From the IMG/VR virus record IMGVR_UViG_3300013116_000108, positions 62,001-126,000 of that record: a stretch of DNA of 64,000 nucleotides; one strand, written 5' to 3'. Shown here in pieces: positions 3,089 to 38,466 of the stretch. The position numbers and the translations under genes were made by a program. Each line of letters starts with the position of its first letter. The first letter of the stretch is position 1. The notes under the pieces were generated by a model that was not told where the DNA came from, ran no database searches, and saw only the letters and a program-made list of their open reading frames with translations.

Positions 3089-4243
3089 TTATTTTTTATT
3101 CTGTTTTAGCCAGTTTTGGGCTATTTTATTACGAGGCTCTGCTGTTAAAAACTTTCTTAAACTGCTTTCAACTTTTGTAAATGCTTCTGCTCTATTAGGA
3201 TCTTCCAAGCCGCCTGAATTGTCTATAACAATAAACCTATCTGCTCCAAATAGTTGTTGGAACTTCATTATATTTTCTTGTACTGCTCGCCACATTTGTT
3301 CTACTTTTAATATTGGCAATTTTCTAGGACGTTGTAAATTTCTTTCTTGTGCTACTGCTAATTTTGTATTAACAAATAACATCATTGTGCCATAACCTAA
3401 ATCAATCATTTCTTGTCTTATTTTTGCTGTCTTTTCAACATCACGACCAGTGCCGTCAATTACTACACCTAGTTTGCCGTCTAACCACCAGCCTTTTTGC
3501 TTCGCCATTAATTCTTTGCCTTGATCCCTAGTTGCTTGTCCGTCTGGGCTATAAATTTGTTCAGGGTCACCTACGTCCATGCCCTTTTTTGCCATTAAGT
3601 GTTCAAACATTTTATCTGAATCTATTACTTTTAATCCAAATTGTTTTAATACTTCTCGTGCTACATGAGATTTACCAGAACCAGGCCCGCCTGCCATAAA
3701 CACGGCTTTAAAAATATGTTTGTCTTGGGGGCCTTCTTCTATATTTAAACCAGTATCAACTAGTCTTTTTTTTTGAACAGTTTCAATCTGCTTATTGTAT
3801 TTGGCTCTAATTAAACTTGGCTTTAATCCAAGTTCTCTCGTCCTTATATCATCAACAGCGTTTTGGATTCTATATGCTATCTCTTTTGCTTTAGCATTGT
3901 CTGTTCCTTCAGCACTTTTAAATAACATTTCTACATACTCATCTATAGTAGCCAAGTATCCTGCTATATTGCCTTCGTTGTCTACTGAAACTTCTGATTC
4001 TATAGAAACTGTTTGTCCAGGTTTTGCTCCGCCTGGCTTTTTAAGTTTATTTTTATTATCGTGATTTAATTTAATAGATGTTTTACCACCACTTGAACTA
4101 ACATCAATGTTTGGATCTTTATCTAAATCCAAATTCATAGTTTGTCCTGGGCCTGTTTGTACAGATATCTTTTTACCATCCGGAGAAATTTTAGTAACTT
4201 TTCCTTGTTGTGGGTTTGCTTCTATTAATTTATACCAGCTCAT
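3089..4243 (-). CDS. Fusion protein with C-terminal P-loop kinase (zeta-toxin/AAA_33/PNK-like)
   Basis: KAVFMAGGPGSGKS Walker A, VIDSD, VVIDGTG, LAVAQERNLQRPR lid. Confidence 0.75.
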   Translation of the reverse strand: MSWYKLIEANPQQGKVTKISPDGKKISVQTGPGQTMNLDLDKDPNIDVSSSGGKTSIKLNHDNKNKLKKPGGAKPGQTVSIESEVSVDNEGNIAGYLATIDEYVEMLFKSAEGTDNAKAKEIAYRIQNAVDDIRTRELGLKPSLIRAKYNKQIETVQKKRLVDTGLNIEEGPQDKHIFKAVFMAGGPGSGKSHVAREVLKQFGLKVIDSDKMFEHLMAKKGMDVGDPEQIYSPDGQATRDQGKELMAKQKGWWLDGKLGVVIDGTGRDVEKTAKIRQEMIDLGYGTMMLFVNTKLAVAQERNLQRPRKLPILKVEQMWRAVQENIMKFQQLFGADRFIVIDNSGGLEDPNRAEAFTKVESSLRKFLTAEPRNKIAQNWLKQNKK

Positions 4244-4521
4244 TATCTCATTGCCTTATTCATTGATTGTACCCTGCGACTTGCTGGGTTAATACGTTTT
4301 GTTCTTCTAGATTTTAAAGCATTTCTTCTTTTATACTTTGCTTTAGTTATCATTAATTTAATACGTTTTTTAACGTTAGGTGCTTTATAACAAGCACCAG
4401 GTGTAGAGACAATTTTGCCTTTAAGCCTGCCTGTAGAACAGCGGTACTTACGGACAACTTTCTTGCCTGATCTGGCCCATGCCATTGTTGTTTCTAGTTG
4501 TGTAATTTCTTCGACTAGCAT
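4243..4521 (-). CDS. Small, very basic protein, probably virion-associated
   Basis: 92 aa, K/R-rich; starts MLVEEI; TAAATA-N5-ATG. Confidence 0.6.
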   Translation of the reverse strand: MLVEEITQLETTMAWARSGKKVVRKYRCSTGRLKGKIVSTPGACYKAPNVKKRIKLMITKAKYKRRNALKSRRTKRINPASRRVQSMNKAMR

Positions 4522-4542: not shown

Positions 4543-4806
4543 TTAATTAAGGATAATTAGTTGATAGGTCAAAAATGCCACTGCAGACACTAATGCTCCT
4601 ATTATACCAACTCCTATAGTCGTTACTTGTTTAGCACGACTTGTCTTATCTTTATACATAGCGTCACGTAACTCTACTAAAACTTCGTCCATTTTAGTCA
4701 TACGCTCGTCAATCGAGTCCAATTTCTCTTCCATTCTCTTATACCTTTCTGCACATAAATCAACGTGTGCCTCGAGGCTTTCTTTTTCAACGTCTAAAAC
4801 TGCCAT
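4543..4806 (-). CDS. Coiled-coil protein with one C-terminal TM helix (holin/XhlA-like architecture)
   Basis: EAHVDLCAERY heptads followed by IGVGIIGALVSAVAFLTYQLIIL. Confidence 0.5.
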   Translation of the reverse strand: MAVLDVEKESLEAHVDLCAERYKRMEEKLDSIDERMTKMDEVLVELRDAMYKDKTSRAKQVTTIGVGIIGALVSAVAFLTYQLIILN

Positions 4807-4844
4807 TGTGTCTTCTCACCTATGTATATCGTTAATTAGTGAGT

Positions 4845-4902
4845 TGCTACTATTACAATGCTATTGTGTTATGCCTATAAAGTTTGCCTATTGTGTTGCC
4901 TA
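4845..4902 (-). repeat. Five TAG(G)CA motifs with 12-14 nt period in the leader of the 4806 gene
   Basis: Plus-strand TGCTA at 4845 and 4859, TGCCTA at 4872, 4885 and 4897; CTATTGTGTT at 4861 and 4888. Confidence 0.7.
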
Positions 4903-4932
4903 CTAGTGTCAACTTGCTCTTCTAACCACAAG

Positions 4933-4938
4933 TATTTA
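4933..4938 (-). promoter_or_regulatory. Late promoter TAAATA
   Basis: Motif at the far end of the 135-nt intergenic leader. Confidence 0.5.
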
Positions 4939-4940
4939 TG

Positions 4941-5462
4941 CTAAACGTCTAAAGCATAACAGAGTGTATTTACTTTAACGCCTGTTGTAGCAAGGGTACT
5001 TGAAGTTAAATTTACTGTTTCTTGTAACCCTGTTAATACAGGTATAATATCTAACTGGTCTGTTAGTAATTTAACAGGATCATTGTCGCTACTAAAGATA
5101 TCAGGGGTTTCAAAGCCAAACTCCATAGTCCATACTTTGTGTTTTCCTTTGTAACCAAACCCTAACGAGCCTATACTAACAGTTTCACTAGTAGGCTCTT
5201 TTAACATAATAGGCTGAGCTCTAATAGAAATGCATTGTACAAGGGTTTCCCAGTTACGTTGCTCGTTCCTACTAATGTTCCATGTTTCTTGATTATTAAT
5301 AATATTTTTTAAATCGTCAACAAACGGCAAAGGTACATCTGCTCTAAATTCTGATATCATACCAGTAGCAGAAATATCTACTAATGTTTTAATTTGATAA
5401 TGGCTTCTTAGTGTTCCAAAATCATATCCTGTAGGTGAGCCGTGTGCTGTTCCTGATGTCAT
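4941..5462 (-). CDS. Hypothetical, probable structural protein
   Basis: 173-aa ORF in the late region. Confidence 0.5.
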   Translation of the reverse strand: MTSGTAHGSPTGYDFGTLRSHYQIKTLVDISATGMISEFRADVPLPFVDDLKNIINNQETWNISRNEQRNWETLVQCISIRAQPIMLKEPTSETVSIGSLGFGYKGKHKVWTMEFGFETPDIFSSDNDPVKLLTDQLDIIPVLTGLQETVNLTSSTLATTGVKVNTLCYALDV

Positions 5463-6547: not shown

Positions 6548-6582
6548 TATATATGTACTTATCTAGTGTTGAACATGGGGTC

Positions 6583-6611
6583 AAAAAAATAGGCACTATA
6601 AAAGTGCCTAT
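6583..6611 (-). terminator. Rho-independent terminator
   Basis: Stem ataggcact/agtgcctat with T-run on the minus strand, after the 6642-6935 gene. Confidence 0.8.
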
Positions 6612-6641
6612 TTAAACTTCGGGAGGAAGTTTTAAGTTTTA

Positions 6642-32637: not shown

Positions 32638-33503
32638 ATTACCCACTTTTTAATTAACTGCCATGCTTCTCCATTTTTCATTTCACCTAACGTAAATTGA
32701 TGATAAGACAAAGCATTAAAATATTGTTGCCTATTTGGTTCTTCTTTTAACTTACTATGATTTTCTATATCATTCCAATCAAATGCTACAGATTTTGAAG
32801 AAGCATATTCTGTTGAAAATACAGGAACTCCTTCTAGTGTTGCTTTAACTACTGCTCCACTATTATAAGCAACCACACAATAAGCATTTTCTAAATCTTC
32901 TTCAAACGTTGTTTGCCTAATAAGAGGTTCAATCTCACGAAATTCTTTTTCAAATTGTAAACTACCTACTGGAAAACCATTTTCGTCAACGTGTGTTACT
33001 GGAGGTTTATACCTAACAATAACTTTTCTATCTGTAACGTTTTTCAGCCATTCTAATGTAGTGTCTAACCAATCTTCATCTCCTGTATACCAGGCTGTAG
33101 GTTGAGTTGGAGGGAGAACTAATATATGTCCTTTGGTATTTAGACTCCACGGTTTAATATTAACGTGTTGCTTAAAGTATGTATTAAATCTATCTTCAGG
33201 ATAATGCTTTGTTATATCTTTCATGTTTATACCGTTTTTAGTAACACGGTACCACGAATCATCTGTATGTTTATGTCCTGCTAGAAAGTAAGCATGGTCT
33301 ATATGTATATAATTAGGTGCTTTGCGATATACTTCTGCTGTACCTCTTAAAATGCCAAAACTAGTAAAGTAGTCATTGGGATTTGAATTTTGGATGTCTA
33401 TATCTAACTGGTCTAAACGCCTAACTTGACCATTAGCACCCTTACAAAATAATTTTACTACTTTAGATGTTGTTTTACGACTCGTGTCGTACCCGTATAT
33501 CAT
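32634..33503 (-). CDS. GT-B / capsule-synthesis-like glycosyltransferase
   Basis: YIHIDHAYF, IVRYKP, VVAYNSGAVVKATLEGVPV. Confidence 0.6.
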   Translation of the reverse strand: MIYGYDTSRKTTSKVVKLFCKGANGQVRRLDQLDIDIQNSNPNDYFTSFGILRGTAEVYRKAPNYIHIDHAYFLAGHKHTDDSWYRVTKNGINMKDITKHYPEDRFNTYFKQHVNIKPWSLNTKGHILVLPPTQPTAWYTGDEDWLDTTLEWLKNVTDRKVIVRYKPPVTHVDENGFPVGSLQFEKEFREIEPLIRQTTFEEDLENAYCVVAYNSGAVVKATLEGVPVFSTEYASSKSVAFDWNDIENHSKLKEEPNRQQYFNALSYHQFTLGEMKNGEAWQLIKKWVI

Positions 33504-33560
33504 TATCGATTATCTATCCACTTGTTGACTTATTCTACAATATTTATTGTAAATACTTTT

Positions 33561-37222: not shown

Positions 37223-37243
37223 AATTGCCTTCCTTGATTAATT

Positions 37244-37273
37244 AAAAGTGTAACAGACCGAAGCCTGTTACAC
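37244..37273 (-). terminator. Rho-independent terminator after gp32
   Basis: GTGTAACAG-gcTTCGgt-CTGTTACAC followed by TTTT. Confidence 0.85.
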
Positions 37274-37287
37274 TGACTTACTAAGAT

Positions 37288-38295
37288 TTACTTCTGTTGA
37301 CGATCTCTAATCATTGCTAGAATATCATCTGCCTTTTTAGCAGAAGTTGTTTCAACAGGAGCCTCAGCCTTTGCTACTGGAGCCGGTGCTGGAGTACTAA
37401 CTTCTTCTGTTGTAGTTTCAGCAACTGGCTGTGTTGAAACAGCCGGAGCGGGAGACGGTGTTGCCGTAGTAGAAGTAGTTGTTTGTGTACTGCCTTGAGG
37501 AGCACTAACACCAGCCGGACGATAATAAGCACCAAATTTCTCGGTATCGTAAGGCTTGCCATCAACTGATTCCTCAAACATTTGTTTGATGATGTTAAGT
37601 TCAGTTTCTGACGGTTTCTTAGGTAAGAAGTCATTCAATGTAAACAACCCATGTGTGTCAATTGCTGTTTGTTCTTCAGCACTTAATGGAGTTTCTTTAC
37701 GAGCCCATTTAGATGTTGAATAATCAGCATAGCCACCTTTTGTGGTTTTTGTTACACGAAAATCTAGTCCAGCAGTTGAATCTGTTGGTAATTCGTCCAT
37801 TTCTGGATCCATTAAACTTGCTTTAATAATATTAAAGAGTTGTGGCCCCATAATAAAACGTCTGATTGGATTTTCTGGAGTTGAATCTTCAGTTAGAGGA
37901 TTTTCTCTAACAAATCCTTGGAAAACGTACGAACGTTTCTTCCAGTACTTACGACCCATGTCCTCTAGTGAGCTGTCTTTAAACCAAGGACGAACCTCAG
38001 TCAAGATTGGACATGAACCAACTGGTTCCCACATTTCCATACACGGAACTTGTACCGTACAAGGTTTGCTATTAACGTCGCCTTTAATACCTTGGAAAGG
38101 TAAACGAATCATTTGACGTTCTGCCCAGAAAAATGTATTACTAGAATCTCCATCAGGGAGAAACCTTAATGTAGTACTTTCGTTTTCTTGGATGTTCCAG
38201 TGAGGGAAGATAGCATTATCTCCTCCTGTGCTACTGCCTGATTGGCGTGTTTCTTGAGCTTGTAGCCTAGCTCGTATTTCCGCAAGTGATGCCAT
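37288..38295 (-). CDS. gp32: Single-stranded DNA-binding protein (T4 gp32-like)
   Basis: LRFLPD, CPIL, RKYWKKRSY, DFRVTK, YADYSTSKW, DDILAMIR tail. Confidence 0.9.
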   Translation of the reverse strand: MASLAEIRARLQAQETRQSGSSTGGDNAIFPHWNIQENESTTLRFLPDGDSSNTFFWAERQMIRLPFQGIKGDVNSKPCTVQVPCMEMWEPVGSCPILTEVRPWFKDSSLEDMGRKYWKKRSYVFQGFVRENPLTEDSTPENPIRRFIMGPQLFNIIKASLMDPEMDELPTDSTAGLDFRVTKTTKGGYADYSTSKWARKETPLSAEEQTAIDTHGLFTLNDFLPKKPSETELNIIKQMFEESVDGKPYDTEKFGAYYRPAGVSAPQGSTQTTTSTTATPSPAPAVSTQPVAETTTEEVSTPAPAPVAKAEAPVETTSAKKADDILAMIRDRQQK

Positions 38296-38355
38296 AATAT
38301 ATGCCTCCTATGTGCCTTTGTTAATTGCCTTGATAAAACATAATTCCAATTATGT
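38290..38355 (-). promoter_or_regulatory. gp32 leader: hairpin plus periodic AGGCA repeats
   Basis: ACATAAT-TGGA-ATTATGT hairpin (38338-38355); plus-strand TGCC at 38290, 38302, 38313 and 38326. Confidence 0.6.
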
Positions 38356-38366
38356 CTTAACATTTA

Positions 38367-38466
38367 TATTTATCACTCCTTGCTAAAAATGATAATAAAA
38401 ACTGGCTCCGTTGTTAAATTTTTATTTAACAAGTACATTATTACATAGAACCAGTGTGAAAGTCAA
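38367..38466 (-). promoter_or_regulatory. Tandem sigma70-like and late promoters of gp32
   Basis: TTGACT (38466-38461) with a weak -10 at 38443-38437; TAAATA at 38372-38367. Confidence 0.5.

What the first reader, a model, noticed from the sequence alone, without database searches (positions are those of the whole stretch)
4801..4938. Periodic TAG(G)CA array and an RBS-sequestering hairpin ahead of a holin-like gene
Seen in sequence: a 135-nt leader carries five TAG(G)CA motifs 12-14 nt apart and a duplicated AACACAATAG. A CTCAC...GTGAG pairing could cover the RBS, and the gene starts ATG GCA. This is the same core motif as in the gp32 leader. The product is a coiled coil with one TM helix. 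Inference: a multivalent RNA-binding platform that times translation of a possible lysis or membrane protein, or a small decoy RNA.
Basis: partly seen in the sequence, partly recalled or inferred. Interest (0 to 1): 0.6.

Follow-up and report, generated by a model that had tools for sequence, protein, structure and literature searches.

The report
AGGCA-repeat mRNA leader shared with SSB gene
The leader of a small late membrane-protein gene in an uncultured marine jumbo phage carries a conserved array of AGGCA motifs, the same motif that marks the leader of the phage's single-stranded-DNA-binding protein gene, so the two genes probably share one translational control.

Summary
It has an ATAAATA late-promoter box (4939-4933), three TAGGCA (4902, 4890, 4877) and two degenerate TAGCA (4863, 4849). 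A weak CUCACU/GGUGAG hairpin covers the Shine-Dalgarno, followed by ATG GCA (4806). In the whole 204 kb contig only two AGGCA triplets exist: this leader and the leader of the gp32-like SSB gene. The motif is under selection. 78 of 80 related SSB loci carry at least one AGGCA (73 carry 2-3), placed after a covarying 5' hairpin. 23 of 79 homologues of the 87-aa gene, down to about 40% identity, carry 2-6 copies between the late promoter and the ATG, usually 11-14 nt apart. Spacers differ between lineages while AGGCA stays. Other homologues have short leaders without it. The leader is less structured than shuffled sequence, and no Rfam family matches. Metatranscriptome contigs include the array, but this is weak evidence. 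Best reading: an RNA-level operator built like the T4 gene 32 operator (5' structure plus an unstructured tract of short repeats), recruited to a second gene. The binder is probably the SSB itself, but neither the binder nor the direction of control has been tested. The decoy-RNA idea is not supported, and the holin label is weak.

The parts
4933..4939 (-). ATAAATA box, a T4-type late-promoter-like motif 2 nt after the stop codon of the upstream ORF
   Evidence: TAAATA is invariant in all relatives. ATAAATA occurs 39 times in the 204 kb contig, and 30 of these lie 8-150 nt upstream of a same-strand start.
4913..4916 (-). Position where three RNA-library contigs of close relatives end; a possible mRNA 5' end
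   Evidence: record 1 of run X15 and record 8 of run X16 end at 4916, and record 18 of run X19 ends at 4913. These come from three studies. Caveat: they are contigs rather than reads, and strain variation begins just upstream of here, so assembly breaks could mimic a 5' end.
4872..4902 (-). Core array: three TAGGCA (4902-4897, 4890-4885, 4877-4872)
   Evidence: The second and third copies, with the AACTTTA between them, are nearly invariant in relatives L002-L009 (L002 has CAGGCA at copy 2). The region scores 34.5 with a weight matrix trained only on other genomes' SSB leaders, above all 20 shuffled-genome maxima (at most 30.4).
4845..4863 (-). Two degenerate copies, TAGCA at 4863-4859 and 4849-4845. 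Each lies directly upstream of a 5' arm of an RBS-occluding stem.
   Evidence: These copies are lineage-variable: the fourth position is CAGGCA in L006/L008 and is lost in L002-L004.
4855..4860 (-). CAUUGU, which can pair with ACAAUG at the start codon (4809-4804) or with the upstream ACAAU (4867-4863)
   Evidence: It is in the minimum-free-energy fold of L006/L008 (frequency 0.62) and of the 3' part of the window leader. Both blocks are invariant in L002-L009. Not significant against shuffles.
4815..4843 (-). Hairpin CUCACU (4843-4838) / GGUGAG (4820-4815); the 3' arm is the Shine-Dalgarno
   Evidence: -6.0 kcal/mol, z = -1.2. Replaced by CCCA/UGGG in L006-L009 and by other RBS-enclosing stems in L125-L127. 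RBS accessibility is 0.44 against 0.52 with a shuffled upstream leader.
4543..4806 (-). Gene for an 87-aa protein: one long helix, invariant N-terminal E..LEAHV.LC..RY motif, C-terminal membrane anchor
   Evidence: Weak PHROG hits: phrog_1103 (unknown function) and phrog_1193 'hemolysin' at E about 7e-5. No hit in 50,697 cultured-phage records.
4243..4521 (-). Downstream 92-aa very basic protein gene, syntenic in all lineages and covered by the same RNA-library contig
   Evidence: No family hit.
38302..38373 (-). Leader of the SSB gene: ATAAATA 38373-38367, hairpin 38355-38338, and AGGCA at 38330-38326, 38317-38313 and 38306-38302 (the last one on the Shine-Dalgarno)
   Evidence: The architecture is conserved in 80 related loci.
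37288..38295 (-). gp32-like single-stranded-DNA-binding protein gene, the candidate binder of the motif
   Evidence: phrog_1192, E = 1.3e-68. Nearest cultured relatives are the jumbo phages PA5oct, Atu_ph07, RaK2 and 121Q, at 45-58% identity.

Best explanation
The 134-nt intergenic tract is the 5' leader of a late mRNA for the 87-aa membrane protein and the basic protein after it. It carries a single-stranded RNA platform of (U)AGGCA motifs about 12-14 nt apart, in an A-rich, G-poor, deliberately unstructured tract. A weak stem follows that partly hides the Shine-Dalgarno and the AUG.

The same motif, after a stable 5' hairpin, fills the leader of the phage's gp32-like SSB gene, where the last copy lies on or next to the RBS. 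[quoted passage not shown] I therefore read AGGCA as the recognition repeat of a phage translational regulator, most likely the SSB itself. I read this leader as a second operator of that type, recruited to a late gene. The expected effect is that translation of the membrane protein follows the pool of free regulator.

Shown: the motif, its conservation, its restriction to two leaders per genome, the lack of structure, and its position between promoter box and RBS.

Inferred: that it acts as RNA, that a protein binds it, that this protein is the SSB, and whether binding represses or activates.
For: There are only two AGGCA triplets in 204 kb, and both are in leaders. 78 of 80 SSB loci at 60-82% identity carry AGGCA in the last 70 nt (73 of them have 2-3 copies). 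The extended consensus is a-U-AGGCA-A-(A/C). A covarying 5' hairpin precedes the array (mean z = -2.6).

For the 87-aa gene, 23 of 79 homologue loci have 2-6 copies between TAAATA and the ATG. Spacing is 11-14 nt in 47 of 58 gaps, G is almost absent from the flanks, and spacers differ between lineages.

Both leaders carry the motif in the same genome in G000, G006 and G008. In G006 the only cluster of 3 or more copies in 306 kb is this gene's leader. In G002 the two best windows are the SSB leader and the leader of another small gene.

An equally dense AGGCA cluster inside an ORF is not conserved in homologues that encode the same peptide. This is a negative control.

The leaders fold less well than shuffles (z +0.2 to +2.1). 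No terminator and no sigma-70-like site lie inside the leader. The T4 operator architecture is taken from PMC535899.
Against: No binding or expression data exist. The RNA evidence consists of assembled contigs whose common end could be an assembly break.

In this gene the array never reaches the RBS: the last AGGCA is 38-74 nt before the ATG in 28 of 28 leaders. Simple occlusion as in T4 would therefore need cooperative spreading or a structural relay.

T4 gp32 is not known to recognise a specific pentamer or to control a second mRNA (my own knowledge).

Cultured relatives PA5oct, RaK2 and 121Q have SSB leaders without AGGCA.

The RBS stem is statistically weak in the window (z -0.3 to -1.3).

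G001 and G002 have the motif in the SSB leader but not in this gene's leader, so the coupling is optional.
Confidence: 0.5

Rival explanations
1. Ribosome standby or enhancer tract. The AGG-containing repeats in an unstructured leader recruit 30S subunits (through the anti-Shine-Dalgarno or protein S1). The subunits wait until the weak RBS stem opens. No dedicated regulator is involved.
For: In many SSB leaders the last AGGCA is the only Shine-Dalgarno-like element at the right distance from the ATG. The tract is unstructured and lies upstream of a partly occluded RBS. AGGCA is about 3-fold enriched within 25 nt of starts (11 against 3.7 expected).
Against: The invariant CA after AGG and the preferred U before it do not pair with the 16S 3' end (my own knowledge of the anti-Shine-Dalgarno sequence). 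Ordinary genes of this phage use AGGAG or AAGGA. Arrays occur at only two leaders per genome, and the major structural genes lack them.
Confidence: 0.18
2. DNA-level operator. The direct repeats are binding sites for a phage DNA-binding protein that blocks or modulates late transcription just downstream of the promoter.
For: The repeats are direct, about 12-13 bp apart, and begin 11-36 bp after the TAAATA box. Sequence alone cannot separate DNA recognition from RNA recognition.
Against: The arrays always lie in the transcribed leader on the sense strand, extend to about +100, and in SSB leaders overlap the Shine-Dalgarno. In SSB leaders spacing varies from 10 to 34 nt. The flanks are G-depleted and folding is avoided, which are properties of RNA. 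In one subclade the array is bracketed by GAUGC...GCAUC arms that tolerate G-U variants.
Confidence: 0.1
3. RNA processing or stability element. AGGCA marks cleavage or protection sites for a phage or host ribonuclease and so sets mRNA half-life, comparable to T4 RegB acting at GGAG.
For: The motif is short, lies in single-stranded context and can overlap a Shine-Dalgarno, like RegB sites (my own knowledge). SSB leaders start with a stable 5' hairpin typical of stabilisers.
Against: Regular 11-14-nt arrays of up to six copies are not needed for cleavage. There is no evidence of ends at the motifs, although contigs cannot show such ends.
Confidence: 0.1
4. Separate small decoy or sponge RNA, made from the leader, that titrates an RNA-binding protein.
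For: The multivalent motif array resembles CsrB-type sponges in principle.
Against: No terminator follows the array. RNA-library contigs continue from the leader through both downstream genes. No CsrA, Hfq or cold-shock-domain gene is in the contig.
Confidence: 0.03
5. Neutral remnant or chance: a duplicated piece of the SSB leader with no function of its own.
For: In relatives L006 and L127 the leader begins with the same hairpin core (AGUUGGAACU) that appears in the SSB leader of L036. This suggests the module was copied.
Against: AGGCA is kept while spacers diverge, across homologues down to about 40% protein identity. Copy number ranges from 2 to 6. The chance expectation is about 0.
Confidence: 0.03

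Closest known systems
Translational operator of T4/RB69 gene 32 (autogenous repression by gp32)
   Same: It is the 5' leader of a phage mRNA with a structured 5' element followed by an unstructured A-rich tract of more than 40 nt. That tract carries several copies of a short repeat (UUAAA/UAAA in T4, AGGCA here) and leads towards the RBS (PMC535899). The SSB gene of this phage clade has exactly this layout.
   Different: The element studied here precedes a different gene. Its 5' hairpin is weak in the window. The repeat is a G/C-containing pentamer. The array ends 38-74 nt before the ATG instead of covering the RBS. Binding by the SSB is untested.
CsrA/RsmA-controlled leaders and CsrB-type sponges
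   Same: Several copies of a short purine-rich motif lie in a leader. In the SSB leader one copy overlaps the Shine-Dalgarno.
   Different: The defining GGA core is absent from AGGCA. The motifs are not presented in hairpin loops. No CsrA gene was found in the contig, and the control search rang.
TRAP and HutP triplet-repeat RNA targets
   Same: Regularly spaced U/GAG-containing repeats are read by a multimeric protein on single-stranded RNA.
   Different: Spacing there is 2-4 nt between triplets and the output is an attenuation terminator. Here the period is 11-14 nt and there is no terminator.
Ribosome standby sites and translational enhancers (for example the tisB leader or the T7 gene 10 epsilon element)
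   Same: An unstructured tract lies upstream of a partly sequestered RBS.
   Different: Those elements are not built of an exact, phylogenetically conserved pentamer shared by a small set of leaders.
XhlA (PBSX lysis-associated membrane protein), for the gene product only
   Same: About 87-90 aa, with an N-terminal coiled-coil helix and a C-terminal membrane anchor. There are weak hits to PHROG 'hemolysin' and 'holin' families.
   Different: Pfam XhlA is far below threshold (E = 0.43, 11 bits against a 34.7-bit cut-off). The invariant LEAHV.LC..RY motif is specific to this family. No lysin or holin gene is adjacent.

Membership tests
T4-type gene 32 translational operator | Lies in the leader of the SSB (gene 32) mRNA | tested here: not met
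   The element precedes the 87-aa gene. The SSB gene of the same genome has its own copy at 38373-38302.
T4-type gene 32 translational operator | Structured 5' nucleation element (a pseudoknot in T4) | tested here: inconclusive
   The window has only a 3-bp AGU/ACU stem or a 4-5-bp stem. Relatives have GUAGC-GAAA-GCUAC, AGUU-GG-AACU or longer hairpins. The whole leader is not structured. SSB leaders have a strong hairpin.
T4-type gene 32 translational operator | Adjacent unstructured tract of more than 40 nt with short repeated motifs | tested here: met
   About 60 nt with five motif copies. A is 42% and G is 12% outside the motifs. Folding z = +0.96.
T4-type gene 32 translational operator | The repeat tract extends over the RBS | tested here: not met
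   The last AGGCA is 38-74 nt before the ATG in 28 of 28 leaders. In the window the last consensus copy starts 70 nt, and the last degenerate copy 43 nt, before the ATG.
T4-type gene 32 translational operator | Cooperative binding by the SSB and repression of translation | not testable with these tools
   Needs binding and reporter assays.
CsrA/RsmA target leader | GGA-core motifs, usually in hairpin loops, with CsrA present | tested here: not met
   AGGCA has no GGA. The tract is unstructured. No CsrA gene is in the contig, and the control search rang in 3 genomes.
T4 RegA operator | A RegA protein is encoded by the phage | tested here: inconclusive
   PF01818 was not found in the own contig or in G001, G002, G006 or G007, two of which are at least 98% complete. 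The control search rang nowhere, so absence is not proven.
Any Rfam family | Match to a curated covariance model | tested here: not met
   No match at gathering score in the window. No match at E up to 1 in 4700-5000. Only a chance rRNA hit (E = 0.17) near the SSB leader.
T4-type late promoter | (T)ATAAATA box shortly upstream of the transcript start | tested here: met
   ATAAATA at 4939-4933. TAAATA is invariant in relatives. The motif is strongly enriched upstream of genes. Activity was not tested.
Sigma-70 promoter using the TTGACA at 4912-4907 | A -10 hexamer 16-18 nt downstream | tested here: not met
   The scan finds no site in the leader. The spacing to TAGGCA changes from 16 nt (window) to 13 nt (L006).
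XhlA (PF10779) / holin, for the product | Significant match to the family model | tested here: not met
   PF10779 scores E = 0.43 for the window protein and is hit at E < 0.01 by only 2 of 21 homologues. phrog_1193 and phrog_689 are hit by 3 of 21 each.

The most novel reading that the evidence does not exclude
The array is a sensor of free SSB that works in the opposite direction to the SSB gene's own operator. The three consensus sites nucleate the helix-destabilising SSB. The protein then spreads onto the two weaker TAGCA sites, which abut the 5' arms of the stems hiding the Shine-Dalgarno and the AUG. This opens the RBS. Translation of the membrane protein, possibly lysis-associated, would then switch on only when single-stranded DNA disappears and free SSB rises. 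That would couple the end of replication and packaging to a late membrane event.
Probability: 0.1. Interest if true: 0.85.

Novelty: new variant of a known kind. Interest (0 to 1): 0.62.

Why it matters
Autoregulation of T4 gene 32 is a textbook case, but it is described for one mRNA and has no clear sequence code. Here a whole clade of uncultured marine and freshwater jumbo phages shows a simple, countable code: AGGCA repeats after a 5' hairpin in the SSB leader. The same code has been recruited to at least two other small genes. If the SSB or another phage protein reads it, this defines a small post-transcriptional regulon in phages that have no cultured representative. It would also give a directly testable RNA-protein pair, and it offers a handle for annotating more than 100 leaders that no RNA family covers today.

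Tried and rejected
- TTGACA at 4912-4907 as a sigma-70 -35 box: rejected. There is no -10 at the right distance and the spacing is not conserved.
- A promoter inside the array that would start the transcript downstream of it: no site was found.
- A conserved fold for the whole leader: RNAalifold gave no pairs and z-scores are positive.
- A stem bracketing the array: present as GAUGC...GCAUC in one subclade, but not beyond chance in the window's lineage (z -0.5 to -0.9).
- Long-range pairing of AGGC/CUUU with codons 6-11: it appears in minimum-free-energy folds of five relatives, but there is too little divergence to test it.
- A third AGGCA cluster at contig position about 33,500 and one in G005: both lie inside ORFs. 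The first is not conserved in homologues.
- Known RNA-binding regulators (CsrA, Hfq, cold-shock domain, RegA): none found.
- The downstream basic 92-aa protein as a candidate binder: no family or atlas lead.
- Cultured-phage matches: none for the DNA and none for the 87-aa protein.
- The structure model is a single helix, so no fold search was run.
- Literature searches for the motif or for a jumbo-phage or cyanophage SSB operator found only the T4/RB69 work. One search failed on syntax.
- Collection-wide pattern scans for AGGCA arrays were not run, because my own estimate put chance matches above 10,000.

Full report
**What the window is.** The window is part of a 204,100-bp IMG/VR virus contig, which CheckV rates as 56% complete. 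GC content is about 34%. Its gp32-like SSB (phrog_1192, E = 1.3e-68) is closest to the SSBs of cultured jumbo phages PA5oct, Atu_ph07, RaK2 and 121Q, at 45-58% identity. Other genes resemble those of marine T4-like phages. Sequencing runs that hold this stretch are marine or seawater metagenomes. I therefore treat it as an uncultured marine jumbo myovirus.

**Checking the observation.** Every feature lies on the minus strand.
- The 173-aa ORF (5462-4941) stops at 4943-4941.
- ATAAATA is at 4939-4933.
- TAGGCA is at 4902, 4890 and 4877, and TAGCA is at 4863 and 4849.
- The CUCACU (4843-4838) / GGUGAG (4820-4815) hairpin has the Shine-Dalgarno as its 3' arm.
- The gene starts ATG GCA at 4806, and the 87-aa ORF ends at 4543.

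A triple AGGCA with 5-12-nt gaps occurs twice in the window against 0.00 expected. These are the only two such clusters on either strand of the 204 kb contig. The other one is the SSB leader at 38330-38302. Tandem Repeats Finder calls a 13-nt period. The hairpin is real but weak (-6 kcal/mol, z = -1.2).

**Conservation in close relatives.** Nine IMG/VR loci carry the same gene pair. The upstream protein is 63-100% identical and the 87-aa protein is 91-100% identical. In their leaders the TAAATA box is invariant. The block holding the second and third TAGGCA copies, CAUUGU, and the ACAAUGGC start region are invariant or nearly so. The first, fourth and fifth motif copies vary. In L006-L009 the Shine-Dalgarno hairpin is rebuilt as CCCA/UGGG.

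**Conservation in distant relatives.** The 87-aa protein belongs to a family of at least 114 clusters, found on contigs of up to 346 kb. The family has an invariant E..LEAHV.LC..RY motif and a C-terminal anchor. Of 79 homologue loci, 23 carry 2-6 AGGCA between a TAAATA box and the ATG, and 43 carry none. The sampled array-less homologues have short leaders: about 20 nt after the TAAATA box in G001 and G002, and a median of 36 nt in the 36 leaders with fewer than two AGGCA.

Among 28 unique array leaders:
- the spacing between copies is 11-14 nt in 47 of 58 cases;
- G is nearly absent next to the motif;
- the first copy lies 11-36 nt after TAAATA;
- the last copy lies 38-74 nt before the ATG.

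Spacer sequences differ between lineages while AGGCA is kept. Selection therefore acts on the motif. The array looks like a module inserted between an ancestral late promoter and the RBS.

**The SSB leader.** In 80 SSB loci at 60-82% identity, 73 have 2-3 AGGCA in the last 70 nt of the leader and 5 have one. The extended consensus is a-U-AGGCA-A-(A/C). The last copy starts 10-15 nt (on the Shine-Dalgarno) or 24-26 nt before the ATG. A stable hairpin of varying sequence precedes the first copy: mean z = -2.6, with 92% of leaders below -1. The rest of the leader is A-rich (48%) and G-poor (11%).

This is the layout of the T4 gene 32 operator, which consists of a 5' pseudoknot and an adjacent tract of more than 40 nt carrying UUAAA/UAAA repeats. 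Both parts are needed for autogenous repression (PMC535899). Cultured relatives show other leader contents:
- Atu_ph07 has UUAGCACAAU repeats.
- GAP32 and XbC2 have AAAGAAGCAAA twice.
- PA5oct, RaK2, 121Q and Phosso show no obvious repeat.

**How specific the arrays are.** I built a weight matrix only from other genomes' SSB-leader motifs and scanned the 204 kb contig with it.
- The 87-aa leader ranks second, at 34.5, above all 20 shuffled-genome maxima (at most 30.4).
- The contig's own SSB leader ranks third.
- The top window lies inside a 314-aa ORF. Homologues that encode the same peptide do not keep those AGGCA copies, so that cluster is a chance product of codon choice and serves as a negative control.

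In G006 (306 kb) the only cluster of three or more copies is the 87-aa leader, with six copies, and its SSB leader has three. In G002 (340 kb, 98% complete) the two best windows are the SSB leader and the leader of an unrelated 115-aa gene with the same promoter-hairpin-repeat layout. So each genome uses the motif at the SSB gene plus one further small gene.

**RNA properties.** The window leader folds no better than shuffles (z = +0.96). All eight lineages tested have positive z-scores (+0.2 to +2.1), and RNAalifold finds no shared fold.

RBS-occluding stems recur with different sequences in different lineages:
- CUCACU/GGUGAG nested inside CAUUGU/ACAAUG in the window;
- CCCA/UGGG in L006;
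- GUGUUC/GAACAC in L127.

Predicted RBS accessibility is lower than with a shuffled upstream leader in 22 of 28 leaders. The means are 0.46 against 0.51, compared with 0.585 in short-leader homologues. This effect is modest and the lineages are not independent. In the window, the two degenerate TAGCA copies sit directly before the 5' arms of these stems.

**Transcription.** ATAAATA behaves like a promoter: 30 of its 39 occurrences lie 8-150 nt upstream of a same-strand start. No sigma-70-like site and no terminator lies in the leader.

In four marine metatranscriptome runs from four studies, contigs of close relatives (95-97% identical) cover the gene and the leader. They end at 4916, 4916 and 4913, and none crosses 4917-4983. 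That fits a 5' end just upstream of the array. However, these are assembled contigs, DNA carry-over is possible, and strain variation begins exactly there. I count this only as weak support.

**Candidate binder.** No CsrA, Hfq or cold-shock-domain gene is present in the contig, and the control searches rang. No RegA was found in this contig or in four related genomes, but that control was silent, so absence is not proven. The SSB leader is the one common target in every genome examined, and T4 gp32 represses its own mRNA. The SSB is therefore the simplest candidate. This is an inference, not a result.

**The gene product.** AlphaFold2 gives one long helix (residues 2-86, pLDDT 83.7). The similarity to XhlA and holins is weak. 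The protein has no relative in 50,697 cultured-phage records. Its neighbours are late and virion genes, a radical SAM enzyme and a zeta-toxin/AAA_33-type kinase-like protein. 'Membrane protein' is safe. 'Holin' is not.

**Verdict.** The reading as a multivalent RNA platform in front of a membrane-protein gene is plausible and is the best-supported one. Its closest analogue is the T4 gene 32 operator, here recruited to a second gene. Binder, direction and timing remain untested, and the decoy-RNA alternative is unlikely.

Noticed in passing
window 38302-38373 (minus strand) and loci L036-L115: The SSB (gp32-like) gene leaders of this phage clade share a T4-operator-like layout: a promoter, a covarying stable hairpin, then 2-3 AGGCA in an A-rich tract ending at the RBS. 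No Rfam family covers it.
   Followed up: yes
L122 470-486 (G002) and L123 410-427 (G001): An unrelated 111-115-aa gene with no family hit has the same leader type in two related genomes: a sigma-70-like promoter, a hairpin and two AGGCA copies, the last at the Shine-Dalgarno position.
   Followed up: partly
loci L177, L182, L184, L189, L198, L216, L222, L223, L230, L238, L241, L243: In one subclade of 87-aa gene leaders the AGGCA array is enclosed by conserved arms, (U)GAUGC(U)...(A)GCAUC, with G-U variants (AGCGUC). This suggests the array is displayed in a large closed loop. Statistical support is modest (z 0.4-3.3), and the feature is absent from the window's lineage.
   Followed up: partly
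contig G000 about 33,480-33,540, minus strand (outside the window; locus L152): Four AGGCA copies lie within about 60 nt inside a 314-aa ORF, in different reading frames. This is the top-scoring motif window of the contig, but homologues encoding the same peptide do not keep the copies.
   Followed up: yes
L118 (Atu_ph07), L168 (XbC2), L169 (GAP32): SSB leaders of cultured jumbo-phage relatives carry other short repeats: UUAGCACAAU in Atu_ph07 and AAAGAAGCAAA twice in XbC2 and GAP32. This hints at lineage-specific versions of the same operator idea.
   Followed up: partly
window 4543-4806 (minus strand) and alignment A3: The 87-aa family has an invariant N-terminal motif, E..LEAHV.LC..RY, with a conserved His and Cys. 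That is unusual for a plain coiled-coil membrane anchor.
   Followed up: partly
window 4243-4521 (minus strand): A 92-aa extremely basic protein always follows the 87-aa gene and lies on the same RNA-library contig. It has no family assignment. It could be a nucleic-acid-binding or internal virion protein.
   Followed up: partly
window 6548-6641 (minus strand): A terminator-like hairpin (AGGCAC...GUGCCU followed by a U run) lies upstream of the radical SAM gene. The AGGCA in it is part of the stem, not of an array.
   Followed up: no
window 37223-37287 (minus strand): Between the SSB gene and the UvsX gene there is a terminator-like hairpin followed by a single AGGCA at the Shine-Dalgarno position of uvsX.
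   Followed up: no
window 4801-4812 (minus strand): The start region ACACAAUGGCA is almost the repeat unit ACACAAUAGGCA, so the AUG itself lies in a motif-like context. Many SSB genes of the clade also start AUGGCA (59 of 80).
   Followed up: partly
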